Assembly (NCBI GenBank): GCA_965637545.1
Contig: OZ281494.1
Span: 32,364,001 to 32,428,000 of the forward strand
Source of the DNA: Phallusia mammillata
Lineage: Eukaryota
DNA: 64,000 nucleotides
Reading direction: 5' to 3'
Below are positions 3,001-30,791 of this stretch, piece by piece. The notes below the pieces were generated by a model, which did no database searches, was not told the origin of the DNA, and saw nothing but the letters and a program-made list of their open reading frames with translations. Every line of letters starts with the position of its first letter. Within the stretch, counting starts at the first letter, position 1. Both the position numbers and the translations under genes were made by a program.

Positions 3001-6000
3001 TGCCTTCGAGCCTTATTGGTCCAATTTAGTTGCCATTAACAACGTCTTAAAAATGCGAAAATGATTTCATCAAGGCAATTTTCCCGGTAACTGCATCAGG
3101 GGATAAAGAGAAAGTGAGAGAATGAAAGAGAATAAGAGAGGACAACCCGTGAAGCAGTCACAGCTTGAAAGGAACGAACAATCACCGTGCTGTGATAACC
3201 GACCACGCACCACAAACGTTAGTTTCTCCCTGATCGAGGTTATAAGATAACGCAATTTGGACACACGAAATCGATATTTATGAGCAATTATATGCGACAA
3301 TTGTGACCGCGCTTTTTCGATATTGCTTATTATTGATGGCTGGATGTTATTTTATTGACAAATCTACAGGCAGTCGACCCCTTGCCCAGCGGGGCGCGCC
3401 TTTATTGAGATAACTGTCGAAATAGATTAAAGCGTCGAAGATTGGCGGGCCCTCCTCCCCCATCAGCCGCGCGAATGTCGCGTCATATTCTAGAATTCAA
3501 CTTGATTTAATCTGGCCGCGATTTCGATTCGCCGAAAACTACTTTAATAACCTTTCAAATCGAGTTGCTGCCTTTAGAATGGCTTCGTGCAGCAAAAAAC
3601 TTCACTCATTTTTTTCAGTACACGTTTCTCACCACGTGGTCTTATCCATGTTAACTCCAGTAGGTTTATCTCCACCTAACAATTACAATTTGTTTGTTAC
3701 TGAACACTGGACCATTACCATTTCAAATGCATTATGGCTTGTTTTTGAAAAGCATACATTAGGGTACTCAATTTATCTTCTACAAACTGTCTGTACTTCA
3801 CAACTACAGCAATAGTTTAAGTGCTAGCAATGTTTTTACTTATATTTGAAGTCCGCATCTACAAGCGAATTTAAAGGATGGTTTTGAAATGTTCTACCCA
3901 ATTTTCAAGGTTACATGAAGGTCACATCGACCGTTAGGTCCACGCCATTATGGGGCCTTCTTCCCGCTGTGTCAAAGCCATTAGCTGGAAGCAGACGTTG
4001 CTTAGCAATTTAGCTTAATCACGTTCTTATGAAGAGCGACCGGGTGCACATTTTTCCGCTAACAAGTTCCCGCGGAAATGAAAGACAGGCGTGAAATTCG
4101 AATTTTGCCTTCTGTTTATTTTTAACCGAGCGCCCTCAAAACGAAACAGCGGTCTTCACGAGCGAGCGAGAAAACATTGCTTAATGAGAAATCGTTCCGC
4201 AGAGGCGACAGAATTAACGCGAGAGATCCGATCAGCGATTAATTGCGATGCCCTGTCGGTGAGGATTGTTTGTTGTGGTGAATTAACCGCAGCGAACACA
4301 CCGCTCATCGGATGTGGTCTGCGTTTTGGGGAGGAGGCTAGCTTCGAGGAAACTGACCACGTGTTTTGAAGGTCACAGGGGTCGCGACCTTTGCACTGCA
4401 AGGAATTCCTTTGAATAATCTATGGGTTATGTTTCTGGTCAGGACTGTGGTCAAATTGCGTCTAAGAGTTTTTGCTAAATTCGTGTTTGGGGGGCGTTTT
4501 TATTTCGGTTTAAAAACGAAACTATTTAAGAAAGCACTCTTAATATTTGTGCGTCCAAAGATTTTTTTATATGAGTCAAAATTTTTTTCACACAGTTTAG
4601 GGGACAAATCTCCTTGCAACGGTCTGCGCATGCGGACAAGCAGTCACAAGATCCATTTTTTACCCGCAAAATCACTCGAAAATTTAGTACTGAAAGTTGA
4701 AAAGTTCAACCAGAGTACGACAAAAATCTAAAATTAAGGACGAAACGAGGTTCTTTGAACTTGCGACATGCGGTTTTGGGGGGGTATCACCTCCACGTCG
4801 CGTGATTAATTGTAGCTGTAGGAAGCTGCAGCAAGGTGTGATTTCTATGTTTTGTGTGACGGTAATTGCTGATTCGTTGTTTCAATTAAAGCTGATCACG
4901 TGAAGTTGCCCGGAACCTTAAGATGTAACAAGGAATTATATTTTCATTTTTAAGGTCGCGGGGTAAATTACGGAAAAAATTACGCAAAATATCGCAAATT
5001 TTCGTATCGGAGATTATGAAACAAACCGAAAGATTTTGAGGGCAATGCGATGAATTACTTTTGGGCAAATTTTGTTTGTAATTTTAACGCTTTTACCTTC
5101 TTAAATCAAGTCGAAAGAGGTATTTTCGTCACAGAAACTTCTGTTGTGCAAAAAAAAAACGTCGGTATAACATACTTTGGACAAATAAAATACGCTGTCT
5201 TGTCACCAGCTACACTGATGAGACCTCATAAAGTAGATCGAAACAGTGTGCAATATCTGCAGCTGAATTATCGTATAATGGCTCCATATGTTTACGTTGC
5301 TAACATAATAAATGAGAGAAAAAACAGCGTTAAAGTCTTTGCAAGAAATTGGATCAGCTTAAAACATGTAATTGTCACACGGAACCCAACTTAGCTGATC
5401 GGAGGTTATTTCAACAAACTTGCAAATTTTAGGGAAAACCGGCTTTAAGGTTGCTTTGAACTTGTTCCAATCCGGCTGAACCAATATCCGTTTGACAGCA
5501 GATTAATGATGGCAAAATGTTGCGAGGGCCCGCAATTATCGCACAAATTCCTCCGTCGTTTTTCCCGGACGTTGGCAGATACGGTCGAAAAACATTTGAC
5601 TACAGCGGCTAAATTGGGCTATAGCGGGCAATCAGAAGGCAGTGAAACATTTTTAACACCTCGCCAACGGGTAATTAAACTGCTCAACCTTGGTATCACA
5701 ACGCCTCGGCTAATTGGCTTTCGCTCTGAGCGGCTTAGGAGCAGCGGTTTTCTATTTTCGGACACGCCGATAATTAAAACGACGGCCCAGCGTTTGGTTT
5801 CACACCGCTTCGCGACACCGTAGTGCGTGGATGTGCTTAACCGGTGTGAATTGCACTTAATGGTCTGAAATCCATTCAGGATCGTTAATGGCACCTTTGT
5901 TTAGCGCTAATTAAGTCTCTGGACTCTGCAAACGACCGGAGATAGATTACAGGAACTCTGGCGGAAATCGGGGGTGCAAAAGTACCCCTAAACGGTTTAA

Positions 6001-7355
6001 AAGCGTTTTTTCTTTCTACTTGCTGCCAAGAAATGTGTTTCTAACACACTAAAGTACAAATTCATACTTTTCGCTTGTTTTGTAAATAGTTTTAATAACT
6101 GTTTAAAATTTAGACGGTTAACTTGGTCATTAAATGCATTTGTCAGTGTTCAAAATAACAAACCTTTAAAAAACTTCATAAGCAAGCCAAAATGGATTTC
6201 TTATTTTCTTATGGGTCCATTGGCGCGCCTTAACCGCATGTAACAAATAAAATCGTTTTATACCCCAGAAAAGTTAACACATGACTTTGTAGATTGGATT
6301 TAATGAGGGGTCAAACAAAGGTGACAGCACCTGGATCGTTTGTGACGTCACATAGCGCATTATTGCACGTGAAGAGGACAATTAACTCTTAAGGCTTGAA
6401 ATAAATCAAAAACAAAATGGGCGATAGCAAGGTCGAAGTTTTCAATGGTTTGCGGCCTTCCAAAATCGGTGACATGCAATTAATGTCAAAAACAAACTTA
6501 GCCCGTAGAGATAATGGCAGTTTAATACAACACTTTTGTGACTCGTTTAATTTAATATAAAACTTAAAAACAGTAAAACTCATACAAGGCTTTTTATTTT
6601 CCAAATGATCTATTATGAAAATTTAGCTACAGAAAAAAGTTCTATAATTCGAAAACACGCATTTTTGGTGTTTAATGAATTAAGCGTATAACCTTTATGA
6701 CGTCATGAATACCATCGTTCGAGATTACCGCCACAATGCGCGTAGCGCGAAACCTAATGCGGTGTTCAAAAATCGGCTATTTTCCTTAAAACTGATGCAT
6801 TATTTGAACACGCTCAACCTATTACATACACCACTTTACAAAACACAAACGGCAAGCCATCATGGGGAAAAATAGGACTGTTTGGATTAGTGGTTTAGTG
6901 CCCTTATAGAGGAACTTTGTTGTGTATTGGAACTTGCCTTATTTGCAAACACAAGGGGGTCTTAATCTTCCTAGTGAATGCAATTGCTTTGAAGTTTGAA
7001 AACACAGGAGATAAGACGATTATATTTAAAGACGCATAGTTGACAAAAATAGGCTAATCTTGTCAACATAATGGGGGAATTGGTTTTAACTGGGTTTTAC
7101 AGATAAGAAAAAGGGGGCATTTTGTTAATTGGGGTTTCAAACTAATAGTGGATGCTCATTTGGGCACTTTGCGAACGTTTGGCAAGAAAATTCCGACCCT
7201 TTGAACAAAGGAAAAGAGCTCCTATTGTGACGTGACAAAGCAAGTCGTCCATGCGCGACAGAGATAAATAAATTTGCTCTAATTATTGTGACGAAACAAT
7301 CGTAGCACCTGGTAACAATGGAAAAGCGAAAATTGGGCGAATTTTTGGTATAGAC

Positions 7356-7960
7356 CAGGGCTACTCAAATGGCGGACCGCGGTCCATATCCGGACCTTTG
7401 AGGCGTTGGATGTGGACCTCGACGGTGTTTTGATTACGGCTACATACACACTATTATTTGTGTGTTAATTACTTGATCATTGCTATGTATCGACAGTTTT
7501 TAAACTGGGGCCCGCATAACGATTGTTAGGGGCTGCGAGAAGCCTAAATCTTTGCAAAATCTTATGTGAGGTCAGTTTTTTCAACTGTGAAGAAAAAATA
7601 GTCCGTTATTCCATTACACAATTAACAAAATGGCGATTGTTTGCGCACAATTATATCTGCGATGTAATAAACTGAATTGTGATTCATTACCGTACAAAGC
7701 AATCCTGCAAATCCAGATAAAAGTAATCTGAATGTCGTTGTGCCAAGGTACTCTCACAAGCAGTAAATTCGCGTTTATTGCCTAATTTAAGCTTTTGTTT
7801 TTCTGACATAAACATTCTGCTTGAACAAAAGTGTTCATCTTGCACCGCGATTCTACGCCAAAACAGGCTGTGTTGCATATACATTACTGACGGAAGTGTC
7901 CGGACCCTCGATAATCTTTACCCTTTCTATCTGGTTGACAAAACTGATTGAGTAGCCCTG
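7356..7960. mobile_element. Non-autonomous hAT (Charlie/Buster-like) DNA transposon, 605 bp
   Basis: Perfect 13-bp TIR CAGGGCTACTCAA...TTGAGTAGCCCTG. Perfect 8-bp TSD GTATAGAC at 7348-7355 and 7961-7968. No transposase ORF. Confidence 0.92.
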
Positions 7961-8795
7961 GTATAGACGTTTGCTGTTTTTACCAGAAACCTACTTTTAA
8001 ACCTTAAGAGGTGTGACAATTTGCAGTTTCATACCTGTTACGTAATAATAAATCGCCCTTGGGCAAAATCTTTTGCTGCGTGAAAGTTTTTTTTTTGCTT
8101 TTCCTGCGGGGGCGCAAAACGTGAAATGATACGTGAGAAGACAGATACAAAATTTCAAGGCTGGCGCAATAATTTTCGATTGAAATACCCAGAAAAGGTT
8201 TCGATGTGTCTTTTTCTGCGGGTAACGTTTTGGGATAGGCGTATGCTTTCATACCCAAAAATGTCGATTAGACCCAAAACGTGCAAATGACATCAGATCA
8301 ATACCTACTGAATGCCTAAAAACACACTAAAAATTTCCCATTTACACACTAAAAGAAATCATTAGGTCATTATTGTGGGGAAACGTGAAAATACGTACGA
8401 ACCGTTGTGAACTTTATGAATATTCGGTCTCGAATAACTGAAGCGAGTCAAATTATCGAGTAATTGCCCCTGTTTTGGGCGGCTTTGTGACTCACAAAAG
8501 AAACAAACAAAAGTCTTGGTGACGTCACAATATGACGCATCTAATTACGCGGGAAGCATTATGAGGAGATTCAATAAATACAAGACTGTTGTAATAATTG
8601 GGTACAAAGTCATAAGTAGATAAACTTGATACTATTTTTCTTTCAGTAAAAAGATATTTAAATCTTTTTTGTTATGGTACCTTGAGACAGAAATTAGTTC
8701 AATTAGTCGGTTTGCAATACAAACATAAACAGAGGCGATTAGAAAGGAGGAAATTGGAGCAGGATAAACAAACAGCCCAAAACGGGGGGAAACGG

Positions 8796-8870
8796 TGGCA
8801 CCTGTCATTGCCAGTCACCGTGACACCTGCCACTACCAGTTACCGTGGCACATGCCACTGCCACTTGGCA
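8796..8870 (+). repeat. Degenerate 25-bp tandem repeat x3
   Basis: TGGCACCTGTCATTGCCAGTCACCG / TGACACCTGCCACTACCAGTTACCG / TGGCACATGCCACTGCCACTTGGCA. Confidence 0.75.
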
Positions 8871-11800
8871 CAAACTTGGAGTAAACAAGAATTGAGCTTG
8901 GTGGTAAGCGGAGAGACAAAGCTCAAGCGGAATTCGGAATAAACAAGAATTAAGACAATGATCCCCCCGAGCGGTATAAGCCGATTATCGCGCTGCATTG
9001 ATTGGCAATTCCAGAACTTGCGACAATTGGCTGCGACGAATTAATCTCAACTGTGGATTTAAGGCAAATTCGTGAAGCGCAGTTTGGCAAACATAACGGT
9101 TTAAGACAACTCATTGCGCAGGAGTTTCTGTAGCCATTCGCGCGTACGGTTTCGAAGTTTGTTTTTAGTTAGTATGTTTACAATAGGCAATACGCGGTAA
9201 CTGGAATAAAAATGATTCCACAATCCCATACTATTTATTTATTCGTTCACTACTAGTACAAACTTTCCATATATGACAATCTTTATACTTTTCTAAAGCA
9301 GTACAAACTTGTTCTGTAGTAACCTGCTTTAAGCGCAGAATTGTTCAAATAAACATTATGCTGCACTTAAATGTGCTTGGAAAGTTAACACGTTTTTAAA
9401 AGTAAGCTACCTTTTGTGATTTTCATTGCTGCCATGCGTTTATACAGAAGTACACAACTACGTCGGTAATTAGGATACTCGAAAAAAAACATAAAAAATG
9501 AGCAGCAGTCTATCGACAACACAATATAATCCGATGCAAAACAATTTCGGTAATTTTGAATGCCACTATTCATGCGGTACCACATAACTGTTGCGTAACT
9601 CTAAATATCCGGTGATCGAATTTCCCAGAATTTTACCAAATGCAGCGGCCAACAGACCTAACACATGTGTCCACAAATCGGGTTTTCGAACGAGTAACGT
9701 GCAGCCAACCGTGTCACAGGGTTAAAGGTTGTTTAAGTATACTTAAATGTCTACTGGGAGTTGTTGTTTAACATTTAATAACGTTTACAACAGGTTTTAA
9801 ATGGGCTTAGCTAAATGCTCAAGGGTTTTAAACGTTAATTGGAACATAAAAATTTCAAGTATAAGTAACTTTTCTCACATATAGAGTAGCAAATAATAAA
9901 CATGGAAATTTCCTACAACCTACTAGCTGTTTCTATACAACAGGGTAGTCTGGTTTACCGTGTATTGTTTCGTATGCCAACTTACAATTCTGAAGGCACC
10001 TGCTTTGAAATTGACCAAAGTGCAACGATTTGGTTACATCGATGGGACCAACTTAACTTGCGTTAATGAAGTTTGCATTATATTACTTAAGAAATATTTT
10101 CATCCCAAAACGACAGAATACAAGCTAAACCGTAGTAAACCTTTCGGGCAAACAACTAAACTGTACTCTCTGTAAAATGTAACAACACTAAATGTAGACA
10201 CCTAAATCTTCTCTCATTTTGTGCAAGCATATTTCACAACCTTAGCATTGACGCTGAAAACACCGTCTCGACATCGCTCTGCAGTCTCACGTTGTGGCCT
10301 AAACTCGTGTGTGGCGAAGTGAGAGAGGCGGGTAGGTACTTGGCAGTCACAACACAAACCCTGGGAAAAAATGCCTGACAGCGGATCGTTAACCCATCGA
10401 CACCGACTCGACATGAAGAATTTCGCGACCAAACCGGCGTTGAAACCCCGCCGTTACTCACTCAGCTGGGTGGAGCGCAATTAACGCACTTGGGAGAAAG
10501 GTAGAAAGGCACGCGGAAATCTTTCCAATGCGGTGTAAGAAAAATGTAAAACGAGACAAGCGCAAAGCTAACAGGGCACAGCGATGCTGTAGAATTTAAT
10601 TCGGCCATTCCGATGGAAAGTGACCGCATTTTTCGGTGGAAGAAATGATCGTAGAACAGACTTCAATTCGGAGGGAGGATCTTTTTGATAAAATCGCGAC
10701 TCTCGAACGTGATGAAGGATAATTGTCGCCACTTTGCGCTGTCACGGTGGAAAGGAAAGAAAAGATAAAAGGAGCGGTGCGACACGTTACATGCATCACA
10801 ACTCAAATTGGTCGAAGGGAAATGATTAGTGCATCCGTTTTTTTTTTTGCCGTTTATTTTCGCTCGACTTTTTCTGAAGATCAAATATAAAGTACAAAGC
10901 TTTTTGGGGGGTGTATACATTAACTGAGGTGAAAATTTTAAGCAAACTAAAATTGTAAACTTTAAAAAAGAATTGCCAAAGTTGGTTTCATTTAATAGGC
11001 AATTGTAACACTATGTCAAACTGTTTTAAAGGTTCATGCAAGGTTATTTTTAGCTGGGAACAAAATACACAATACATACGCGAAAAATTTTCACGCTTTC
11101 AGAGGTATTTCCTTGAAAAAGACGTCAATGTGTAAAAATACATTTAATAGGAGACCATATAGGATTTTCATTATGTCTGGAATCGATAATTTACCTACTT
11201 ATGACACACAACGGCCACACATGCCCAAAAGCTCTAAAAAATTTGTAGTTAGAATGGAAAAAAATAGCTAAAGTGTTACTTTATTACCAATACTTTCGAC
11301 ACAATGCAGTTTCTATGATGCAATAAAGAACAGCAAAGTCTTGTGACATTTTAACGCCGATGGTAATGAGTTGGAGAAAACCTGATACTTAAATTGGGAG
11401 CAACATAATTGGCCCAGGACCGCGCTCTTTTGCAAGACTGTTTGCAGCGGGCTGAGGGGAAGGTGATGGGGGGCGGCCCGCCGTGTGGTCACAACACACG
11501 TGACATTTTAAGGCGTGCGAATTTTTTGCCGGTTTCGGTGCAATTAGGCAAAGACGGTTGTCGACCTGCGTTGTAAAGGGACAAATATTTTGTTTTTATT
11601 TTTCGATGCAAATGAGTTATGCATTTTTTTGTCAAGTAATGCTTGTACATTTTTATATATTTTTCTTTTATCTGTACTGTTTGAAGTATGTGACTGATAA
11701 ATTCGCCAAATAATGAAGAGCAGTACGCGTTTACAGCCGTTATGTGAAGTCATCTTTGGCCAAAACCATTTTCAAATGTTACATAAAATACCGTAAGCAA

Positions 11801-14800
11801 AAAATATAGGAATAAAATCAACATTTAAATTTCAAAAACGAGTGTAATTCAATTCCGAAATTGATTAGTCGCACAAAAAGCCAAAGAGAAACACACACAG
11901 AGAATGTCATTGCCCTTGGCTAAGCGCCGGTGGTAAGTGTTTGCACAAACGGGTGATGAAATATATTGCGCAAAGAATTTAATTAAAAGTCTCGTTAATT
12001 AGGAAACGCCAATCACCAAGGGGTCGCCGCACACGCTGTCCCAAAATACACCTTAGTTAAATATTGTTAGCACGAAAGGTATATTGTCAGAATATATATT
12101 CAGGACACATATATGATTAAAATATATTTTTGTCTGTTTTAATCGCATGCACAACCCTGTAGGTTTAAGTGGTTATTATAACTAATTTTAAGTGGTGAAT
12201 CGTTGCGTCAAAGATTTTAAAGTACATATTCTTAGGATTACATCAAAACGCTACTTTACAAAATGTAACGTTGTGACACTGGCTTACAATTTAAAACGTA
12301 CATTCCTAATGCTAATAAACAGTCCAATATAGAAAGTAACGTTTTGCTGTTGATGGGGTCGGCATTTATAACGGGTTAAACCTCTTCGTTTAAGAGAAAA
12401 GACATTCTAAAATCTACACATGTTGAAGAAAACATATATTACGAGAGGCTCTCATTTGCGTTTAGCTGATATAACCACATATTTGCATTTTGTTTACACA
12501 ACTTGACCAAAAAACAATGCAACTAAAGTAACTTCATCAAGAACATAACTGCCTTGTAGAGCTTGTATGTACTGTAAAACAACGTAATGTAGATGTTTCG
12601 ACAATCTAAAACTGCAACCAAGCTTCTCTGTCTATAACTTTTACTAAACTTTACGCGCTATTATTACGCAACAAAGGTTTCCGAAACGCGATCGAAATTT
12701 TCTCAATCAACGCACCGAACTAACCTTCCAATTACAGCCAACTTTTTTCGCCGTCGTGCCACAATCACTGTTTGTTTGCCCAACAATCACAACTGTCTAT
12801 GACGTAACAACCGCTCAAGAGGGCATGATTCAAGTGGGGGGAGAGGGGTGATTAATTAAGGCCGGGAGACGAAATTAATTGCGCTTGGCGTTTGTTGTTT
12901 TTATGATCAGTATCAAAGTTAGATCTATATCACACTTCACGATCAATGTTTGCATGAAATTCGCTGCTCGGGTTGTGTTTGTAAAATGACACCGACACCA
13001 ATTAACGGCGGAGCTTTTCTTTCATCTTACTCTCAGGTGTTGCCTAATTTGCCTTTAGGCGGCACTGTTAAAGTAAGCGGAAGACAGAGGTTTCTTTTAC
13101 TTTGAGAGAAAATCTCGATTTCCGATTTAAATTCGAGCTAATGAAAGACTGATTTTGTTGATAGTGTTGGAATAGTTAACGAAAATCTGAAAACATTGTC
13201 TAGTTTTGGAATCGGTTGACTGTTGGTTGAACAACTGCATTTACTTAAGTTAAAATTTAATTTTTATTCCGCAAATCAAAATTTAATTTTTAAAACTTTT
13301 GAAAACAACAAAATTTAGGCTGCAGTCTAAATTCACATCCAAGATATTTTTTATAGCAAAACAAAGTTTTTAACAAAACAATAGAAATGCAATTTTGCAA
13401 AAAAAATGATTAACCAATCTTTCACAAATTAATTCAAGTCCAAGTGCTTGCCACTTGATGTCACTAAAGAGTTAAACAATGTAAGTACAGTTAAAGGGAT
13501 TACGTCATAGAGAATAAATCAGTATTCTCGAATATGGCAGATAAGGGTTTGTTTTCTATGCACAAAAAGACCTGCTTTTCCAACAACAGATTTTAAGTGC
13601 CGAAGCACACAGTTTTACATTGTACAAAGTTAGCGTAAAAAGATAAAAAATGCCATTTAATTAGACATTGGCGGCAAAGGAACAAAACTAGACTGTTGTT
13701 TTTTGGCTTTTTGTACGATGTTTATATGTTACCTGTCTGCTAGCTTAGGAAAGCCAAAGCATAACAATACCACAAATGCGCGTAACACCTTCACAGTCAT
13801 AATTCAAATGGAAGTACAGTTCTTTTTGTACTTTACATTAGTTATACTAAGACGACATGCACGCGACTCTAACAGTGTTTAAACCACATAATTTGAGTTT
13901 TAACCTAAAGGATATTAACATTTTTTTCAAAAAGACATATCAAATAGAAATAACAAATCATTTTTTGATGGATTAGGTAAGGTAAAGATTGAAAAGCGCT
14001 GGGTTCTATGTAGACCCGTATATGTTGATATTTCCGACTATACGTTACGCATAAAGCAAGTTGCTGGAACAATTACTACATTCCAGAACATAACAATCGA
14101 ACAATGCAAACGTTCGAATTCGTTCCCACCAAGCCAATATGTAGTTGTTTCACAACAGTCAAACTCAGCAGTTATTGCATTGTGACCGAATAATGGTTCG
14201 CGCGAATATCGTGGGAACACCCATCAAAACCGCGTTTTCGGGCCAATTAACGCGCAGGCATTTGCCGCGGTTGGGCCGCAAACGCGGGAGCTAATTTAAT
14301 TTCAGTGCCAACGGAGAAAACGCTGCCTCCCGCGGGACGCGTTCGAATTTCTTTGTTATATTTCCATTTTGCGTGCACCTTATCGCGTATTAGGCTTATG
14401 ACAGGCACAGTCCACAGGGAAATGTCATTAAAATTACCAATAACGAATCGCTTGGCCTTGCTGTTTGCGAGAAAAGGAAACGTCTGCTGGCAAATAATGA
14501 AATAAGCCTTCCAGCAAGCGACTGAGATTTTCCTAATTTCGGGACTGCTTGTCGTTCATTTAAATCCCTTATTTTGCTAATATTGGAAGTTGTTGATGTT
14601 AATGGACTACTTGTGCCATTTGCAGTACGGAATTGGCAACTTACAAAAACAATTTTATCAAAATAATTAAATTATTGAAATTTACCTAATTTATATTGAA
14701 ACGCATTTTTTTACTTCATGGTCTTGTTGCAAACAATTTCTGCACTTGATTTAGCAATTTATACCAAAAAGTTACACTAAATCCTTAAATACCATCATAT

Positions 14801-17379
14801 TTTTATCTCTCGCCAACATTTGGCACTCAAAAGTCGTTTCCACATGGTTAGAGCGACTCTGGCTGTGTTTCTGCAAATCCACAATGACGTAACAATGGAA
14901 ACTATTAGCTAACAATACGCGAACAGGAACAAAAACTTCGAAAGAAAACATAGACCTTCTACAAAGAACAGGAAATAAAACCCAGAAACAGATTCGACTG
15001 ACTAAAGATACGGTTTGATTCAAATCAAAACACAAGTAATGTGGGTTATTATGAGACAGGTTGAGGCATGCTAGGCCTGAAAAACAACACTTGGAAATTA
15101 CATAGTGTGAAAAGAGGCCAGGGACCTTGTCAAATCAGGTTGTGTTTGTTGTGATTAAGCGAGAGAGCTGGCCATTGCTAGGAAGTACAAACTAGCACAA
15201 CGGAAGTTACTAATCTCATATTTTTTCTCTCTTTTCGCTTTGCACGCCCCGTTTTGAAGACTGAAATAACACAACGGTTGACTCTGGTCAACACCAATCA
15301 TATAGAATCTAACGCAGTTTTAACAATATATGTCTATTGAAGATTGTACTTAACACTTGTAAATTTTAAGAAATACGTATACTGTTGTTTTTGAGTACTT
15401 AATGTTTATGCACTTTACAATTGGTAACCTTTTGGTCCTTAATGGAACAAAAAGTTTAGGGATTTTTTTTTACAAATTTCATAAAACTTTGCCAAATGTG
15501 ATTCTGGTACTCCTTTTCCTTGTTTGATTGCTCTAATTAAATCACTAGCGTACTTACTTCATGTTTTTGCACAAACAAACATTTCGTTAAAAGAAACATG
15601 ATGCACAACACCTTTTGCAATTTAGACAAATTTAATAATATATTCCAAATCAAAGTAAACAGAGAACATAAGTTCGTCCTAACCTTTCTACCATAAAAAA
15701 TTAATGGCAAAAATAAATCAGAACATAAACTTTCGTTCTTGGGTACACACTAATTTACTATCTTGACTTTAACGTAAAACTTAACTAATTCTACAGACTT
15801 GGCTATTCCAAAACCTTTGTCGCCTAATTTCCACTGACAGTAAGTACTTTGTTATAAATTGCTCATAAATTCTAAGTCACACAACAAGGGAAAAAAACTG
15901 CGACAACATTTTCTCTGAGCTGCAAAGTTGCTTCTGCAAAAGCGGTGTGAAACGTTTAACCAACGTCAGTAATTTTTGAAAGGCGGCCAATACTGAGTGC
16001 GAATTGTGGAAGACTTGTAATCTTTCGCATAAGAAAGCTTTGCGATGGGCGGAAACAATTGCACTTGCCCTGTCTTGTCGAACCCAGGCTTCGCTTTCTC
16101 TCACACATCGACTTGTGAATGGCCCGGCGCCGTTAAAGAACCGAAGGGGGGTCAAGGTAGTCAAATTACCCCAACATATGGTACCCAACCAATTAGTTAA
16201 AAAATTTAATTTAAGAGTAAAATTTAATTAAACACTCAGATTTTGTTTTTTAATAATATACAGTTCAACGACTGCTTACTAAAAATGATATGATTTTAAA
16301 ATAAGTGACGTCTTAAGTTTACAATTGTTTCATAAGGTATGTATTATTCTTTAGCCAACTTTTCATTTTATCCCAACATATAGTGTCCAACCATTAACTT
16401 TGAAGTAAAATTTGAATAAAAACAGCTATATTTTTGAAAACTAAAACGGTTTACAGTCTGATTACTATAATATGCAATAATTTCTAAACAAGTCACATTC
16501 AAAGGTAAAATTGCGTCGGGCATACGTTTCAATATTTTGTCTATATTTTATCTCCATATCCCACTTTGTTTTAAAATTGGAATGTGACCGCTACAGTATA
16601 TATTCAAAGGTTTCACAAACTGTGGTTCTCTTCTGAATATACTTTTCAACACATATGCAACAAACAATAGTGCATTTAAACCTGATCCTCACAACAAAAC
16701 AAATCCTAAAAACCGCAAAGAAGCATCAAACCTACATTCTACACCTCCATCATATAAAATTATTACACCAACCCTTGCAGCCAGCATCGAACATTGCCAG
16801 GTTGTGGAGCAGGCTGCATGGGAAAAGGAATATCACTGTGGTGATTTTGAAGGCAATTAAGTCTCTGTTGAAATTGCGGTCACAAATGTCGGTGGTAGCA
16901 TTCAATGGTGGGAGTAACATTGCATATGCGCAGCTCATTGCAATGTATTGCCGCTGATTGGACAACCAATCGTACAAAATACCGCCGGATTACGCATGGA
17001 CTCTGTTCACATGGTTGAGTCTTTTTTCGAATTAACTTAAACGCAATGTTTACACTAAAAAACTTGAATTTACAAAATATATAGAATTTTTCAGAATCAT
17101 TAAAATTAGCCCATACCAATATAAAGTAGACAACTGCTTTCAAGATCAATCACTAATGGGCGACTTTTGTTTCTACAAGTAACAAGCGAAAAATGTAATC
17201 ATTTATTTTTGAAAACAGTTAGTTTAGACTTTTTTCTACTTCTATCATTGGTTCTCATTCCACACACAACTTTAACGCCCATTTCCAAAACAATCATGCT
17301 GTTAAAACGCCTATCTTAGCACAATACCATGTCTTCTAATTGAGCAAATCCCCTAAAATCGAATTTGCCTGTTCTGTAC

Positions 17380-18577
17380 CTGATCGCCACTCATGGCTAC
17401 ATCCGCTTCCATGACTACCGGAGGTTCGTCAGTGCCAGTGACGTCCTGTTTCGGTGCTTGTATCTTCTCTAGAAAGCAAAGTATGCTTTTTCCTGTCGAG
17501 GATTTCTGGAAGCAAAACTTTAAAATTTAGCAAACGCGGCATTCGATTTCAACAAATACGTTTGTGACATCACATAGAGACGAATTAGTTCAAAGAAATA
17601 TGACACAAAATGGAAATACCTGCAATACGATTCCAGCACCTTTTCCTTCCGATATTAAACGTTCTCGTTCATTCATTGTGACATCATGCTCTGACGTCAC
17701 GTGTTTCTGGAATGACGTCATGCTGTCGAAAGTCAGGCGGCATGGAAAGCACATAAGTATCTGGGATTCACTGAAAAAGACGAAAGGCTATTAGAACCCT
17801 GTTTTTGTTTGCAAATTTTTAGCCGATTTAAATTACCTTCGCTGTTCGGTAGAAGTTGCATCGTTTTCTGCAGCATTTATCTGCATCAGTCGATCGAACT
17901 CGGAATCGCAAGACTTCAGATTTTCATCTCCCTCGCTAAAAGTCAGAACTCGAAAACTTTTCGCGATCTTCTCAAAAGAATTTCCACCTAAAAATGGTGC
18001 AATAAAGTTACAGCACAAAACTTACGGAGTCACTGATTTTAAACTGAAAAAGCAATTTTAGACATTTGACTTTTTTTGATAAAAACCAACCGAGTTAAAC
18101 TACAGTAGAAAATACTTTTAACTAACTGTCTGCTCAAATCAAACGCAAACCCGACTTACTTTCACTTCCGGTCACTGTTTCCGTTTTCCCACGGTCTTTC
18201 TCCCACTGACTCCACCAAGTGGTTGCAGAATTATTAAAAAACGTAAGAAACCTGGGAATTTTCGGTATTGATTCACAACTAATATTGTTGTTGTTTGCAT
18301 TCGCGTTAATAGATGACGTAATTGTGACGTCACAGGCATCGTACGCTGCGTCATGAAGGTCAGAAAGCTTTGAGATAAGGTCAGAATCGGTGACGTTGTT
18401 CGAAATCAACAGCGCGGAACCGTTGGCTCGGTACATGATTTGACCTTGGAATGACCTTGCCCCAGACGGTGGGTCGGGAGAGGATGATTGCGTCACAGTG
18501 CTTGAGTTTGTGACATCAGTAAGCTCTGTCTGATCCACGCATGGAAGTGATCCGTGAGTATGCGTAGGTGACGTCAT
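17380..18577 (-). CDS. ZFHX: ZFHX3/ZFHX4 (ATBF1/zfh2)-like zinc-finger homeobox gene, first four coding exons only (3'-partial)
   Basis: Exons are 18577-18160, 17987-17837, 17770-17620 and 17505-17380, with GT-AG introns and consistent phases 1, 2, 0, 0. The translation has FQGQIMYRANGSALLI (cf. vertebrate GEIVYQPDGSAYIV), then KSFRV, then the C2H2 finger ILMCFPCRLTFDSMTSFQKHVTSEHDVTMNERER...SILCFLEK (cf. ILMCFLCKLSFG...H....H.MTLSEEER...LVSFLEPK). Vertebrate motifs are recalled from memory. No downstream exon was recognised in 1-17379. Confidence 0.88.
18441..18457 (-). promoter_or_regulatory. Perfect DR5 nuclear-receptor element (candidate RARE) inside ZFHX coding exon 1
   Basis: The minus strand reads AGGTCA TTCCA AGGTCA. 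The sequence match is exact; function is untested. Confidence 0.5.
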
Positions 18578-21500
18578 TGTTTATCTTTCACAGACTTGGG
18601 GTGTTTTAAGAAACATCTGAAATTCAAATAAAATGGGTAAAATTTCACATCAGTAAGCGATAAAACGTCTGGGAAAATACATTTGCTGATCAATATCTTA
18701 TTCCACCAGTGCATAGGAAGCGCGGATTATAAGTCAACAACACATTACACGGCGGTTCGCCCCTTTTTAAATCATCCTTGCAGAAGACAAGTCTGGTGTC
18801 AAAAGTTTAACAACCCAAGGTCATATTGTTTACCAAGTTAAGAGAAAGACATTTAGAAAAAGGTTTGTTAAATAAGCTCCTCGTGTCTTCGTTTAACGTA
18901 TGTTCTTTAAATCCACTTGAGATAAGAACATTTGGCAATGTTTACTACACTTTTGTAACCTTCAGTAGAACATAGTTACGCATGTTCTACTGTTTAATCT
19001 GCACTATAAAACTCACTCACGTGCCAAAATTGCAGCTCAGTTATCCTGACTCATTGTTGGCGCATAAACAGTAACTATAGGCACTGAACAGTGAACTCAT
19101 GTTGACAAACAAACTCAGAGCTGCCGCTTTTGATATCTGTTAAAGAAAGCTTTAATACTGATTAATTAATACAACTTTTACAACAATACTTACTAAAAGT
19201 TACTACTGAATACTAACCTAAGCACACAACGCAACATTCAGTACATAAACAAACTACAGCAACGTTTTTTACGCTAAGTTGAAGTCACAGAACAATTGGA
19301 AGAAACCAAACAATACAGTTAAGACATGTATTTGAATTAAACTAATCATGTAACAGTAAATCCCTGAAGCAAGTACATAACACAGCTTTAACAGTTACTA
19401 TATCCGCCTATTCTGTTTCACAACTTAGTTTTTTTTATTAAAAAAGAACTGATTTGGCAGAATAAAACTGCAAATTTTTTATAGGTGCTGTTAGCTTTAA
19501 GTCAAGCCCTACGAGGCCTATACTGTACAGAACAAATGAATGGTCGCACCACGCCTTTGAACAAACGAGGCGCCTATCAGAAAATCACGAAATTAAACAA
19601 TTAATTTGTGTCAAGCTCTGCTAGCGGAGAGCAAGACAAAAAGCGAAATCCCTTTTTACGGCGCGCACAATTCAAACACACACAACCTGTGATTGTTGAT
19701 TGTTACGTCAGAATCAACATTGTTACGTGAATGCTGGCAATCCCAACATATAGTTGAGAATGGGGCTAATGACTGTTAGCCTTTGGTGGTCTTTGCTTGG
19801 AATAATTACTCTGCGCTAGGAGAATAATTAAAGTCGTAAACGTTAAACAAACAAGCCAGGCGCGGGCTTTCAGCCAGTATGAGTCGTTAAAGCCCGTTCG
19901 TAGAAATTTCGGCTACAAATTGGAAATCCTTTGTGGAGTGATTCGCTTGTTTTTTTGACCAACGGAATTGCTTTGTTTGGAATTCAATTGTTACGGCGTA
20001 ATTGGAAAGGGTCTGACAATTTTGCATCGCTATTTTACAAGCATTAGTTCAAAGTCAGACAGTTTGGGAAAAAAACTTCGCACAAAAGGGTTATAGCCTA
20101 ACTGAGAATTGTAACACTAAGCTATTACCGTCTTTAGCAAAATTTAACAATTTTTTAACAACAAAAACACATAAATTACATTGTTTAAAATGGCGGATAT
20201 ACAAATTAAATATACATGTACTACCCAAGCCATGTTCTCTTAAACACCTTTCCATTGATTTTCCATTGAATGTCCGACACAGTTCAGCTAATAATTCATC
20301 AGTACAAGGCAATAAACTCGAAACATCGATCCATTTTGCCGTAAATGATCTGTAAACAACGCATTGCAGATGGAATCCCAATGCGTTGTAACGAGGTTGA
20401 GTTTATCACCAGAAAGGTTAAAGGTATTTTGGATGATTAAAAAATAATTTCACCCCCTCTCCTTTCCGGATGTTCTTTTAAATGCCAATTCCGTTTTTAT
20501 TAATGCCAAAAATGTTGATTGATTTTTATAATGCGGTAGATACTAAATGATGCTGATAGTACAAATTATGTTGCACCTTTTTGTGTTGTTGTTGTTGTTA
20601 TTGTTTGTCGACTGTAAGAGCCTGTTTATTACTTCTGTACATTTTACAAAGTTTAAACCACGTTTTATTGCCCAAAAAACAGAAACTGGCCAGCGTTGGG
20701 CACAAAAAACAAGTGCATAAACAATATTCTACTCCTTTAAGAAAGGGTCCCGTCAGAAAATTAAAAAAAAACGTAAATGTATTTTGTTTTACTACTGTAT
20801 GGTATACGATTTACTTAAATCGTTTAAGGCAACGCAATTTAACATTTTCCGAAGGCAAACAGTTTCAACACCGCCAACTAATCAATCTTTAGGACGACAT
20901 TTGCGATAGAAAACAGACAAAAGCCTTATTGCTTGAAACGTTTAATCACAAAGATCGTAAAAATACGTCCGCACCAACGGTTGTGAAAATAACGCACCCC
21001 ATGGAGGCTTTTAAAATCAGACAAGCGACTGTGGAAAGCAGGGTCATTAAAAAAGCAATTACTCTTGACGAAAGGGATTTGACTTTACGTTGGAGAAGTC
21101 AATTTACTGACACTCAATATTTACCTAATTTAATGCCAGTCCAAAATTAACAGCAAACATAAAAATGGTGAAAAACGAATTTGGAAAGTTCAAACGACTG
21201 TAGAGGGGAGGAGTAATTAAAAGCTGACAGTTAATTGGAAAAGAATGTTAATTAACCAGCTAAAAGTGTGCTGAAATCGAATTACAGAAAGTACTGTAAT
21301 GTAAAAAATCAATCACAATTACAAAGTCCCTGTACGCTGGAAATCAAACTAAATGCCAAGCTGCTGGAATAAAAGAAATAATATAAAATGTTCAAGTCAA
21401 TTTGAGGGCTCTAAACAAACATGTAGATAAAATTTATTTTCAAGTTAAAAAGTGCATTTCCGAAACTAAGTCAATATAGGGGATTTTTTAGATAAGGTCA

Positions 21501-22670: not shown

Positions 22671-22687
22671 TGACCTATGTTTGACCT
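22671..22687 (-). promoter_or_regulatory. Perfect DR5 nuclear-receptor element (candidate RARE) 4.1 kb upstream of the ZFHX ATG
   Basis: The minus strand reads AGGTCA AACAT AGGTCA. The sequence match is exact; function is untested. Confidence 0.55.
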
Positions 22688-25600
22688 CAATTACGCTATT
22701 AGGTGCTTGAAGTAATCGTTACTGCCTTGCTTGCTACAGAATAAAGAGAACCCAAAATTGCCTGCTCCAATTTTGCTAGACCGCTCCTCTAACCCCCAAA
22801 ATTGAAGTAAATAAACAAAAATCATCCCAACTACAGAGAGCACACGTGATGTACATTAATTAGAAATGAATTATTCATCGAAAATGAAACATACGCACTT
22901 AATTATTAATTACACGAGCCTGTATGATGTGCACATTAAAACTGTCTTAAACTATAAATCATAAAACTAAAATATCCACTGTCGCTTAAAACAAACTAAT
23001 TGGAGGCGACTGGACGAAATTCAGCAGCATGATGCTCTAAAACGCCACGCTGAGCTAATTTCAGCAAGACGGGCGAAATATTTCTCTCTAGAACACAGCG
23101 ATCGTCGCACAAGACAGGGAAAAAAGTCTGCTTATTATCGCCAGTCATTAATTTCGCCCAGGCCCAACAATTCGGCAGCCAACCGTAGGGGCATTAAGAC
23201 GCCTAGATCCGGGGCGGCGAGGGAGCTTAAAAGAGAGAGAGCTCTTCTCTAACGAGAGAGACAGGGGAGCTTAAGCGGAGATAGAAATGAATCGGAACGG
23301 TGAAAAAACTGAAGGTTCTGTCGTTAGAGTGAAGTCGTTTAAATCATGTTTTTTGCGTCTTGGGAAATACAATCGAAGTCACGTTGACTTTAAATTGAAC
23401 CAATAAAACATTAGGTTTCCATATACGATACGAATAAAGCGGGTTGCTCAAACAAGCTTTGTGCAGTCAACCATAAAAGTCGCTTGCAAGATATTTTTAT
23501 TTATTTTTAAAGCTTGCAAAAAAAATTAACGGGTGATCGGACGAAGCTCGTTCGCGAACCCAACTCAATCGCGCTGGGAACCAAAGGTGTTTTTGACATC
23601 GGCTCATTGCAATCGCATCAGCATAAAGTCACTTGCCATGAAAATCAATATCACCGGGTCTGTTCGCGCCTTTTGCCCGACTAATGACTGCCAGCAGTCA
23701 GCGGATTTTAATTTTGCCACCGTTGACAGATTTTCAACAAAACACATGAAATTCCTGAATCGTCGAATTTCTACTTTGTTGTTCGCAATATCCAGAAGCT
23801 GTTTTTTTTTCATACTAACGTTTTTTTAAGATTGCCAATGTTTTTGGTATAATCTTCATAATACGGTGTAGCTGCGGGTTTAATTATGATCCACCAATTG
23901 TGCCCTCCACTTTTTGCGCTCAATAACGTCTTAACGTTGCGCAGCTATTTCCGGCTTGGTGATTGTTCAGTGCAATTGTGCCGCTATGTTGTCTTTCACC
24001 ATCCGAAATAAACTCAACTCAATTCAAACTTCCGCCTGACTTCACAATTGCAACTTGTGACTTCATAAAAACCAAAACAATTCTTCCCGTTTTCCAACTA
24101 CTTAGCTTCAATGTGACATCCCAGTTGCTATTTCTTACGTTTTAAAGTACAATGTTTTAATAAACCAACAAACAACAAAATCAACGTTACTATATAGGTG
24201 CTAGTTTTGCGTTACCAAATTTTCTACATTTTGTGATGTGAATTGTTTTGTTACAGAAAGTGAATGAATAACCATGGCAACATCAAACAATCTCCTCGTA
24301 TTTCGAATGATCAAAGCGAAAATTGTAAAAATAAAAAATCGATGAAAAGAAGGTTTCGGGACAAAGGAGGCACATCTGTTAAACTAATGAGCTGGAGTTA
24401 AATTTACGGCAGCCCGCTGTTGACGGAAGGAAACTTTTAATTGTATGATCGATTGTTAATCTTGAAACGTCTGTTTGCCAAGAACCTTGATTATTACGTC
24501 ACAGTGACTTAGCAGGCGAATTTAATTCGTTCTAGAAGCACTTGAAGGAGAAATGGAAGCCATAGCGTGGGAATGGACGTTTTATGGCAAACGAATTAAA
24601 AATTCATTTTTGCAAAATTTTGTAGGTGTTGCTACAAAATAAACTATTCGTATGAAAACTGTTCAAAACAATTGGATTTCCAGAAGAATATATTTCACAA
24701 TTTTCTTGTGACGAGTTTGAAACCTTTCTGATATTATGTAACTACGTCAAACAAACAGTTATGACCATTACGACATTATTGCACAACTGCTTTGTAATAA
24801 TAAGCTAACATTTTGACCTTTTTAACCCCTTGATAGATTATGAAGAAAAAGTTGGGGTTTAAGACTCTTGAACACGCATGCTCAAAAAAGGTTTGCTTAC
24901 TAACATTTACCTAACTATGTTAAATTAACCCCTTGGGGATGATTTAGCCCAAGTTGAAAACCTTTGCAATAAACAGAAAACCATTTATTCATTAAACATT
25001 ATTATGAAGACCACCCGGTAAGCAATAAGCACCGACATATGCCCTCGAATTACGTTAAAGCTAAATAATTCCACATAGGGTAGCCCAAAGTTTACGGATG
25101 CAGATTTACTGCTTAAATTTACGGATCGGCTCATCCGAAATAACTAAACAACACAAACCCACGCGTTTCAAATAAATATTGATGAAAAAATAATCCACAC
25201 TAAATTACTTTCGGGGATAGGTTATTGGGAAGGGCAACTAAGAATATTACACATAAAGGCGTAGGAAGAAATGGCATTATTAGGTCACAATTGAATTCGC
25301 GATTCAGGTGAGGTTTTTTAATAAACACATTAAATCTCTAGAATGATCAAAGAGATTTCCGTCGCAAAGTCGCGGCATTTCAATTCAAAAACGTGTCGCT
25401 TGTATTGTCGCCTCCCTAATCCCGCCTCAGCATCTAAATGGAACGGCTCGAATTGTTTCGTTCCATTTAGTTTGTTTGCACAATTCGCAAAATGCCCAGT
25501 GACCGCGTTAATATTCGAAAATAAGTGTATCGCACGGGTCGACAGAACTATTGTCTGGCATTTTTAATCGAGCGACCCCCCCCCCCCCTCTCTTTTCCCC

Positions 25601-28643: not shown

Positions 28644-30791
28644 CGACAGACACGGGATAATCTAGGTATTCCTCGACAGGCAAGACAAAGGCCATCGCGA
28701 ATCGCGCCGCGCGTAATTAAGCGCCGTGCCCATTCGAACTCGCCCGAGCGTGACGGGAGCGGCGAAAAAATAAACGAGAAGCTTTTTGTGTGGGACGTTT
28801 TGGAACGGCGGGCGTTCGAAGTGGAGGGGAGGTATTAATACAGCGAATAGCACGAGAGTAAATAGATTATGAATTAACGAGCAAAAAGCGCCGGAACGTT
28901 TAATTGATGAAGGAAGGCTCGACCCGCGAAGACCTTCTTTTCTTCTCGCGCCGTTTATCAAAATATTCCAGCGCCTGTTTTGTTTTCCTATGCGTTTAAT
29001 TGAAAGCAACGCTCCGTTGAGGCGACGACGCTAGTTTTTGTGTAACTGGTTTTAATTGGCCTCGGTCACACAATGCGCACTGAAATAATATTGATACGGG
29101 GAGTAGATGCCGTTTTGCGATTCATTAGTTCTATTTCTATTGTCATAAACGCGAATAGCAAAAGAAAATTGATCAGCGATTGTTCGCGGCACTACACACA
29201 AACGAAGCATAACAAATTTCAAAATGTCTTCATATTGGCTAGGAATAATTTCATAGGTAAAATCCTTCTGTAAAATTCCCTTAGAATTTAGACTCACCGA
29301 CTTCATAAGCCCGTAGTCGGTTACAAACAAGAACTGAAATTGCCTGAAATAGTTTTCATGTTCATCTTAATCGCTTGCAAATTATTCAGAAGACTGGATA
29401 CGTCTGACTGCACAAACTTGTTTGCAAACCCGCTTTCTTTGCTGCGCGTTGTAATCTCTCATTTTTGACAATTTAATTACCTACTGAAGTCACAAACGAA
29501 ACACTCTAAATTCGATGGGAATTCGAAAAGCAACCCATAAATTTAAAACATCAACCAAAACGATTAGAACTAAAAACTTTGTTTATCACCTATTCTGATC
29601 AGAATATATAACGTACACCTTCAAAATCCAAACCTTCCAAAAATGACACAATCGAACATTTTAAAGTGACAAACCAAGAAAAGAAACACAATACTTTCTT
29701 TCAGAAATGCGTCAAGAGTTCCCATCAAAAGCGGACGTAGCACGACTTCCGGGTTTCACATGCTCAAAACTCCCACGCTCCCAACGGCAGACAATCGGAA
29801 GTGGCAATTAACGCAGAATGACCTTAGAATGACTTTGGCGTCAGATTTGCGTGAAGCACGCGTCGGTTTTGGCCCAGACGCCGGGTTTTAGGGCCGACGG
29901 GCGTGTGAATGGCCGACATTTTTGGCCAGGGCTCTATGACAACCGTTTGATGACATGTATTTGGCGTGGAGGGCCGACTTTTCAATGCTTCAGGGGCCAG
30001 AAGTAGTGCGTAATGCAATGAGCTATAATTAGATGCCAGTTATAAGGGAATCGCGACTTGAATTTCGGCTCACACTGCGCTGGTAGGGCCTGAAATTTTT
30101 AGCTATGTTGCATGAAATAAAACATGGAGGGTATAAACTTTATCATTGCGGCCAATGTCTCGTCACCAGCCGCATTGATAAGACTGCAAAGGTCAAAACA
30201 GTGTGCACTGTCTACAGCTGTCTACATTTAACATGTATGGGCCCGATGCTTTTGTAATTTCGATTTTAAACTGCGTTTACGAAATAAAGGCTGGAGAGTA
30301 ATACATTATCGTTTTTGTCTTGTTTATTTATTTTTTTAATCAAAAGAGTGGTCAACTATACAAAAAAATTAAAAAATAACCCCAAAAAAACCAAACACAA
30401 TTTTTTACCTTTTAGGCATTTCATAACAAGTACAAAACATTTTAAAAAAGCATTGGTCAATCTAATCAACGTTACACCAGCGCAGAAAAATGTTGTTGCG
30501 GAAAAAACAAATGTAACTCAATCCACAATCGAAATCTACAACAATCAAAAAAGCGTACAAGTACTATGACGTCACTATGCGAAAACCGCGCGGCACCTGT
30601 AGATTACAGAACAACATGCATTGTTACGTCATCGAAAATGGAAACCCGATGAGCCAATGAAACAATACCTCGACGAGAAGCACCTGAAAAGCGCATTGTG
30701 ACGTCACAAGCACGCGTGACATTCTAGAATGCATGGACAAGTGACACGAAATGGAGCGCGACCATTGTACGGGGCTAGAGGGGCAATTAAT

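What the first reader, a model, noticed from the sequence alone, without database searches (positions are those of the whole stretch)
18441..18457. Perfect DR5 RARE embedded in the conserved coding motif of ZFHX exon 1
AGGTCA-TTCCA-AGGTCA is read in frame as part of A-R-S-F-Q-G-Q, abutting the conserved G-x-I-x-Y motif. A perfect DR5 of this hexamer is expected about 0.005 times per 64 kb, yet two occur near this gene in the same orientation. DR5 is the canonical RAR/RXR element, and mammalian ZFHX3/ATBF1 is reported to be induced during retinoic-acid-driven neuronal differentiation (recalled). An exonic RARE would be an unusual dual-function sequence.
Basis: partly seen in the sequence, partly recalled or inferred. 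Interest (0 to 1): 0.72.

Follow-up and report, generated by a model that had tools for sequence, protein, structure and literature searches.

The report
Perfect retinoic-acid-type site in ZFHX exon
A textbook docking site for the vitamin A (retinoic acid) receptor really does sit inside the first protein-coding exon of a sea-squirt ZFHX-like gene, with a second one 4 kb upstream; the pair is too unlikely to dismiss as chance, but whether the site works is untested.

Summary
AGGTCAttccaAGGTCA lies on the minus strand at 18441-18457 and reads in frame as R41-S42-F43-Q44-G45-Q46. A second perfect DR5 lies at 22671-22687 on the same strand. No shuffle of the window gave even one. Among all spacings, orientations and hexamers, AGGTCA-N5-AGGTCA is the only non-trivial hexamer pair present twice.

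Two corrections. Spliced RNA contigs show the exon is the first coding exon, not exon 1: a 5' UTR exon lies at 19021-19150. The ZFHX identity rests only on N-terminal motifs and an mRNA of at least 9.4 kb; the rest of the gene is outside the window.

I could fetch one related ascidian. It keeps the RSFQGQ peptide but reads AGGTCGtttcaAGGTCA. Synonymous change inside the element (2 of 6 codons) equals the exon background (31 of 86). So there is no sign of selection on the DNA beyond the protein, though power is low.

Points in favour of function: the improbable pair, earlier scan notes of DR5 clusters at this genome's RAR gene, and mouse Zfhx4. Mouse Zfhx4 is RA-dependent and has a DR5 conserved to fish (PMC7259794).

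Verdict: a credible but unproven RAR/RXR site, about 45% likely to work in vivo. Coincidence is about 38%, another nuclear receptor about 12%. Interest is moderate.

The parts
18441..18457 (-). Perfect DR5, AGGTCA-ttcca-AGGTCA. The 5' half-site (18452-18457) is codons R41 and S42. The 3' half-site (18441-18446) spans Q44, G45 and Q46.
22671..22687 (-). Second perfect DR5, AGGTCA-aacat-AGGTCA. It is in unique intergenic DNA, 4.1 kb upstream of the ATG and at least 3.5 kb upstream of the known 5' end of the transcript.
18158..18616 (-). First coding exon of the ZFHX-like gene (ATG at 18577, 140 codons, ends in phase 0).
   Evidence: spliced RNA contigs X6, X10 and X11; ORF
19021..19150 (-). Upstream non-coding (5' UTR) exon. 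The RNA contig ends at 19150, so the true 5' end is at or beyond that position.
   Evidence: joint 18616/19021 with GT..AG on the minus strand
17837..17985 (-). Second coding exon.
17620..17770 (-). Third coding exon. It carries the only C2H2 zinc finger in the window (17686-17751).
17380..17505 (-). Fourth coding exon. The next exon is not in the window, so the following intron is longer than 17 kb.
18357..18383 (+). Two further AGGTCA half-sites (18357-18362 and 18378-18383) in the same exon, in the opposite orientation. They are made by the two S-D-L codon triplets (TCT GAC CTT). Neither is kept intact in the relative.
19652..19729 (-). Conserved non-coding core, 77 of 78 bases identical to the relative. 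It is a benchmark for what a constrained regulatory element looks like between these two species. It contains no DR5.

Best explanation
The element is a genuine perfect DR5 written into the codons R-S-F-Q-G-Q of the first coding exon of a ZFHX-like gene. Most likely it is one of two RAR/RXR docking sites that make the gene retinoic-acid responsive; the other is the upstream DR5 at 22671-22687. By the standard DR5 model, RXR would sit on the 5' half-site (AGG TCA, R41-S42) and RAR on the 3' half-site (A GGT CA, Q44-G45-Q46). Shown here: the sequence, its reading frame, the exon structure, that the gene is transcribed, and the statistical improbability and DR5-specificity of the pair. Inferred: receptor binding, RA response, and any selection on the DNA motif itself. 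The amino-acid sequence keeps 12 of the 17 bases in place. The perfect match then needs four particular synonymous choices (AGG, TCA, CAA, GGT), about 1 chance in 290 given the peptide. So the protein code explains why the site persists but not why it is there.
For: Two perfect DR5s against about 0.006 expected per window, with 0 of 100 shuffles giving any. Both are on the gene's sense strand, 4.2 kb apart, at the gene's 5' end. AGGTCA pairs occur only at spacing 5, and AGGTCA is the only non-trivial hexamer with two h-N5-h loci. They are not repeats or copies. P(DR5 | peptide RSFQGQ) is about 0.0035, so coding alone does not force it. The relative keeps the element with one mismatch, AGGTCGtttcaAGGTCA; published conserved-RARE criteria accept one mismatch, and a GGGTCG half-site is listed at Pbx1 (PMC7259794). 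Vertebrate precedent: Zfhx4 falls by log2 2.26 in Aldh1a2 knockout mice and has a DR5, GGGTCAgcctgAGGTCA, conserved from mouse to fish inside an RA-dependent H3K27ac peak. Atbf1/Zfhx3 rises 50-fold in RA-treated P19 cells. Earlier scan notes, untested here, report four perfect DR5s and a DR5 minisatellite at this genome's RAR gene.
Against: No binding, chromatin or RA-response data exist. In the only relative, 2 of the 6 DR5 codons differ synonymously, the same rate as the exon overall (31 of 86). One of these changes (TCA>TCG) removes the perfect 5' half-site. The other two AGGTCA half-sites in the exon are not conserved either. The clearly constrained non-coding blocks upstream contain no DR5. 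The relative has no consensus DR5 in 3.9 kb upstream of its ATG, although its contig stops just short of the expected position of DR5 #2. RA responsiveness is reported to be limited in Ciona embryos, where only Hox1 among the Hox genes clearly responds (PMC3227721). The scan read very many windows and many motif types, so a few chance pairs are expected scan-wide.
Confidence: 0.45

Rival explanations
1. Coincidence held in place by the protein code. The conserved peptide RSFQGQ happens to be encoded with codons that spell a DR5. The perfect match in this species may be recent, since TCG>TCA is an ordinary CpG transition. The upstream DR5 would be an unrelated chance match. Under this reading neither site has a regulatory role.
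For: Synonymous divergence inside the element equals the exon background (2/6 against 31/86). The relative has AGGTCG, not AGGTCA. The other exon half-sites are not conserved. No DR5 lies in the conserved non-coding blocks. The hexamer AGGTCA itself is not significantly enriched (28 against 21). From the per-window rate, a genome of this size should hold roughly 10-20 chance perfect DR5s, and the scan covers about 250,000 windows and many motif classes.
Against: Two perfect DR5s in one window has a probability of about 2e-5. Within 4.2 kb on the same strand, about 0.01 such pairs are expected per genome. The effect is specific to DR5 among 11 spacings and to AGGTCA among all hexamers. The gene's vertebrate orthologues are RA targets, which a random location would rarely match.
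Confidence: 0.38
2. The site is real but serves a nuclear receptor other than RAR/RXR. The 3' half-site with its 5' extension reads CCAAGGTCA (TCAAGGTCA in the relative). That is the YCAAGGTCA type of extended half-site bound by monomeric NR5A (FTZ-F1/SF-1) and ERR receptors. DR5s can also be bound by NR4A/RXR, COUP-TF or TR2/4. These receptor specificities come from my own knowledge and were not checked here.
For: The extended 3' half-site YCAAGGTCA is intact in both species, whereas the 5' half-site is not.
Against: The extension is forced by the Phe (TTY) and Gln (CAA) codons. A 5' A before AGGTCA is common across the window (18 of 28 sites), so there is no specific signal for a monomer site. 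The upstream DR5 has no such extension. The excess is specific to the DR5 spacing.
Confidence: 0.12

Closest known systems
Canonical DR5 retinoic acid response elements (RARb2, Hoxa1 3' RARE, Cyp26a1, Dhrs3)
   Same: Two RGKTCA half-sites as a direct repeat with a 5-bp spacer. The spacer TTCCA is even the same as in the mouse Dhrs3 DR5 listed in PMC7259794. There are two elements near one gene, as at Hoxa1 and Dhrs3.
   Different: Both half-sites here are the idealised AGGTCA, whereas none of the 24 deeply conserved mouse RAREs in that table is AGGTCA twice. One element lies inside a coding exon. No binding or response data exist.
Mouse Zfhx4 intragenic DR5 (GGGTCA gcctg AGGTCA, mm10 chr3:5388103-5388119)
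   Same: It is a DR5 inside the gene body of a ZFHX-family gene. That gene depends on RA in vivo, and the element lies in an RA-dependent H3K27ac peak and in one of two RAR ChIP-seq data sets.
   Different: It lies about 170 kb into the mouse locus and there is no evidence of positional homology. I could not establish whether it is exonic. [quoted passage not shown]
Exonic enhancers and dual-use codons ('duons')
   Same: A transcription-factor motif superimposed on conserved codons.
   Different: The expected signature, reduced synonymous divergence over the motif, is not seen here (2/6 against 31/86). The sample is only six codons and one relative.
Ciona Hox1 epidermal RARE
   Same: It is the one functionally characterised ascidian RARE and shows that ascidian RAR/RXR uses direct-repeat elements near developmental genes (PMC3227721).
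   Different: It is a different gene and lies in non-coding DNA. I could not retrieve its spacing type.

Membership tests
DR5-type RARE | Two (A/G)G(G/T)TCA half-sites in direct repeat, separated by 5 bp | tested here: met
   Perfect AGGTCA-N5-AGGTCA at 18441-18457 and at 22671-22687.
DR5-type RARE | Bound by the RAR/RXR heterodimer | not testable with these tools
   No EMSA or ChIP is available. Only sequence is in hand.
DR5-type RARE | Confers retinoic acid responsiveness on the linked gene | not testable with these tools
   No RA-treated RNA data were accessible. Literature searches for ascidian RA targets that include ZFHX/ATBF found nothing.
DR5-type RARE | The organism has RAR and RXR | not tested
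   An earlier scan note (s1-382235) reports an RAR gene in the same genome. A review states that Phallusia and Ciona express RAR and RXR (PMC7827873).
DR5-type RARE | Conserved in relatives beyond neutral or coding expectation | tested here: inconclusive
   The relative keeps 15 of 17 bases and stays within one mismatch of the consensus. The changes are synonymous and at the background rate. DR5 #2 lies outside the relative's contig.
Exonic enhancer / dual-use codons | Reduced synonymous divergence over the motif relative to the rest of the exon | tested here: not met
   2 of 6 codons (33%) in the motif against 31 of 86 (36%) exon-wide. Power is low.
ZFHX3/4 (ATBF1) family gene | N-terminal G-x-I-x-Y-x-x-x-G-S-A motif followed by an isolated C2H2 finger | tested here: inconclusive
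   GQIMYRANGSA (18413-18445) and CFPCRLTFDSMTSFQKHVTSEH (17686-17751) are present. The comparison with vertebrate ZFHX3/4 is from memory only. Pfam gives sub-threshold C2H2 hits and PDB gives nothing.
ZFHX3/4 (ATBF1) family gene | Many C2H2 fingers plus three or four homeodomains in a protein of about 3,000 aa or more | not testable with these tools
   The remaining roughly 8.4 kb of the 9,427-nt RNA contig maps outside the window. The mRNA length is consistent with the family.
NR5A/ERR extended half-site (YCAAGGTCA) | Nine-base match to the extended monomer site | tested here: met
   CCAAGGTCA in the window and TCAAGGTCA in L001. The match is forced by the F-Q-G codons, and a 5' A is common window-wide.

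The most novel reading that the evidence does not exclude
Both perfect DR5s are working RAREs, so ZFHX is a direct retinoic-acid target in an ascidian as Zfhx4 and Zfhx3 are in mouse. The RA-to-ZFHX link would then predate the split between tunicates and vertebrates. One of the two elements would be embedded in conserved codons (RSFQGQ) next to the family's N-terminal motif, which would be a true dual-use coding and hormone-response sequence.
Probability: 0.35. Interest if true: 0.6.

Novelty: new member of a known kind. Interest (0 to 1): 0.4.

Why it matters
Direct retinoic-acid targets in ascidians are very few. According to PMC3227721, Hox1 is the only Hox gene shown to respond clearly. 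This limits what can be said about how the vertebrate RA network evolved. A ZFHX gene with two consensus DR5s, whose mouse orthologues are RA-dependent, would be a cheap candidate to test for a second conserved RA target in the chordate lineage. If the exon site works, it would also be a clean example of a hormone response element overlaid on conserved codons. If it does not work, it is a useful warning that even perfect, statistically improbable motif pairs can be inert.

Tried and rejected
1. Repeat or duplication origin. blastn of both DR5 regions against the window found no other copies and no similarity between the two regions. An 11-bp tandem duplication is unlikely because the structure is out of frame and is shared with the relative.

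2. Monomer-receptor signature. All five AGGTCA sites around the exon have a 5' A, but so do 18 of 28 sites window-wide. I dropped this idea.

3. Local AGGTCA inflation from the genome-wide TGACGTCA excess (22 against 0.86). AGGTCA is only 1.3-fold over expectation, so this does not explain the pair.

4. More relatives. These searches yielded only P0001/L001: the representative-library search (the other hits are spurious), three word-index searches and a metagenome scan.

5. Orthologue of DR5 #2. L001 ends at about window position 22400, and no DR5-like site lies in its first 546 bases.

6. ZFHX identity. Pfam and PDB were uninformative.

In one search the four exons were concatenated inside a script only to count codons.

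8. The variant check in another individual (X3) found 27 SNPs in 5.9 kb and none in either DR5. For 17-bp targets this is uninformative.

Full report
**Observation.** On the minus strand, 18441-18457 reads AGGTCATTCCAAGGTCA, and 22671-22687 reads AGGTCAAACATAGGTCA. None of 100 dinucleotide-preserving shuffles of the window produced a single perfect DR5. From the observed hexamer frequency (28 AGGTCA sites on both strands), about 0.006 are expected per window.

With the ATG at 18577, the element is read GCA AGG TCA TTC CAA GGT CAA ATC ATG TAC. That is A40 R41 S42 F43 Q44 G45 Q46 I47 M48 Y49. The 3' half-site therefore contains the Gly codon of the GQIMY...GSA motif.

**Specificity controls.**
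- Perfect AGGTCA pairs occur at no other direct-repeat spacing from 0 to 10, and in no inverted or everted arrangement.
- Allowing one mismatch to RGKTCA, DR5 has 8 matches against about 3 expected. The other ten spacings have 0-6.
- Across all hexamers, only three have two h-N5-h loci in the window. These are AGGTCA, the AT-rich TATTTT, and a hexamer that lies in two copies of a 3.3-kb repeat.
- The two DR5 regions are unique sequence and unrelated to each other.

**Gene context.** Contigs from RNA-like public runs of the same organism are spliced exactly at GT..AG borders. They give these exons on the minus strand:
- 19021-19150, non-coding, where the contig ends
- 18158-18616, with the ATG at 18577
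- 17837-17985
- 17620-17770
- 17380-17505

One RNA contig is 9,427 nt long. Its remaining 8.4 kb maps outside the window, because the sequence that follows 17380 in the RNA is absent from the window. The intron there is longer than 17 kb.

Only the GQIMYRANGSA motif and one C2H2 finger are in the window. Pfam and PDB give nothing above threshold. The ZFHX assignment rests on my recollection of the vertebrate ZFHX3/4 N-terminus and on the very long mRNA. It is plausible but not tested.

Earlier notes of this scan call the genome Phallusia mammillata. I did not verify that.

**Comparison with a relative.** All protein searches returned only one orthologue. It is a genomic ORF from run DRR090687 (P0001, 63% identity) on a 4.8-kb contig, L001. 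Collinear conserved blocks upstream support orthology.

In L001 the peptide SRSFQGQIMYRANGSALLIS is kept, but the DNA reads AGGTCGTTTCAAGGTCA. Ser TCA has become TCG, which breaks the perfect 5' half-site. Phe TTC has become TTT in the spacer.

Over the whole exon, 31 of 86 identical-residue codons (36%) differ synonymously. Within the DR5 the figure is 2 of 6 (33%). So the DNA motif shows no constraint beyond that of the protein.

The two other AGGTCA half-sites in the exon (18357 and 18378) are made by two S-D-L triplets. They are not kept either.

Power is low, with six codons and one species. Published criteria for conserved RAREs accept one mismatch, and a GGGTCG half-site is listed at Pbx1. 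I therefore score this test as inconclusive rather than negative.

Truly constrained non-coding DNA between the two species is easy to see. One example is a 78-bp core at 19652-19729 with 77 of 78 identical bases. It contains no DR5.

L001 stops about 270 bp short of the expected position of the second DR5, and nothing DR5-like lies in its first 546 bases. The upstream element could not be tested.

**What the code does and does not explain.** Given the peptide RSFQGQ, a perfect DR5 needs AGG (Arg), TCA (Ser), CAA (Gln) and GGT (Gly). That is about 0.0035 with either local or uniform codon use. The protein explains why 12 of the 17 bases stay put. It does not explain why the match is perfect. 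TCG to TCA is an ordinary CpG transition, so the perfect form may be recent in this lineage. That last point is inference.

**Weighing chance against function.** Two perfect DR5s in one window has a probability of about 2e-5. A same-strand pair within 4.2 kb is expected about 0.01 times in a genome of this size. A multiplicity of 10-20 textbook composite motifs raises this to about 0.1-0.2.

Several points count against chance. The pair flanks the 5' end of one gene. The excess is specific to DR5. The gene family has independent links to RA:
- Atbf1/Zfhx3 rises 50-fold in RA-treated P19 cells (as cited in PMC3520988).
- Mouse Zfhx4 falls by log2 2.26 in Aldh1a2 knockouts.
- Mouse Zfhx4 carries a DR5, GGGTCAgcctgAGGTCA, conserved from mouse to fish. 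It lies in an RA-dependent H3K27ac peak and in one of two RAR ChIP-seq sets (PMC7259794).

Earlier notes, untested here, report clusters of perfect DR5s at this genome's RAR gene.

Several points count against function. There is no synonymous-site signal. No DR5 lies in the conserved non-coding blocks. RA responsiveness is reported to be limited in Ciona embryos (PMC3227721). All experimental evidence is missing.

**Verdict.**
- About 0.45: the exon DR5, together with the upstream one, is a working RAR/RXR element.
- About 0.38: coincidence preserved by the protein code.
- About 0.12: a site for another nuclear receptor. The 3' half-site reads YCAAGGTCA in both species, but that extension is forced by the Phe and Gln codons, and a 5' A is common window-wide.

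This is a new candidate member of a known class of element. Its exonic position would make it an unusual variant only if function is shown.

Noticed in passing
window 19548-19729: Three collinear non-coding blocks are conserved with the relative, about 0.5 kb upstream of the known 5' UTR exon. The core at 19652-19729 is 77/78 identical and holds two ACGTAACAAT repeats and three AACAAT (Sox-like) words. Block 19581-19606 has a TAATTA-type word. This is a likely promoter or enhancer of the ZFHX-like gene.
   Followed up: partly
window 1007-60840: The palindrome TGACGTCA occurs 22 times against 0.86 expected. Sites include the start codon (ATGACGTCA, M-T-S, conserved in the relative) and other exon positions. 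Earlier notes show the excess is genome-wide.
   Followed up: partly
L001 4108-4124: The relative has a second quasi-DR5, AGGTCAtttcaAGGCTT, 76 bp downstream of the first and in another reading frame (E-V-I-S-R-L). At the same place the window has TGACCT in the opposite orientation.
   Followed up: no
window 23385-23401 and 29819-29835: Two one-mismatch DR5-like elements (GGTTCAatttaAAGTCA and AAGTCAttctaAGGTCA) lie on the same strand as the two perfect DR5s, further upstream of the gene.
   Followed up: no
window 1-17380: No further exons of the gene were found on the minus strand. The RNA contigs continue with sequence absent from the window, so the intron after exon 17380-17505 exceeds 17 kb.
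   Followed up: partly
window 18409: There is an A>G polymorphism in two other samples (X3, X11). It is a synonymous TTG>CTG change at L57, and the derived codon equals the relative's codon.
   Followed up: no
window 40741-41235 (-): A 164-aa ORF ends in a Tctex-1/dynein-light-chain-like sequence (recognised from memory). It is the first clear coding sequence upstream of the ZFHX-like gene, so about 20 kb of gene-poor DNA lies between them.
   Followed up: no
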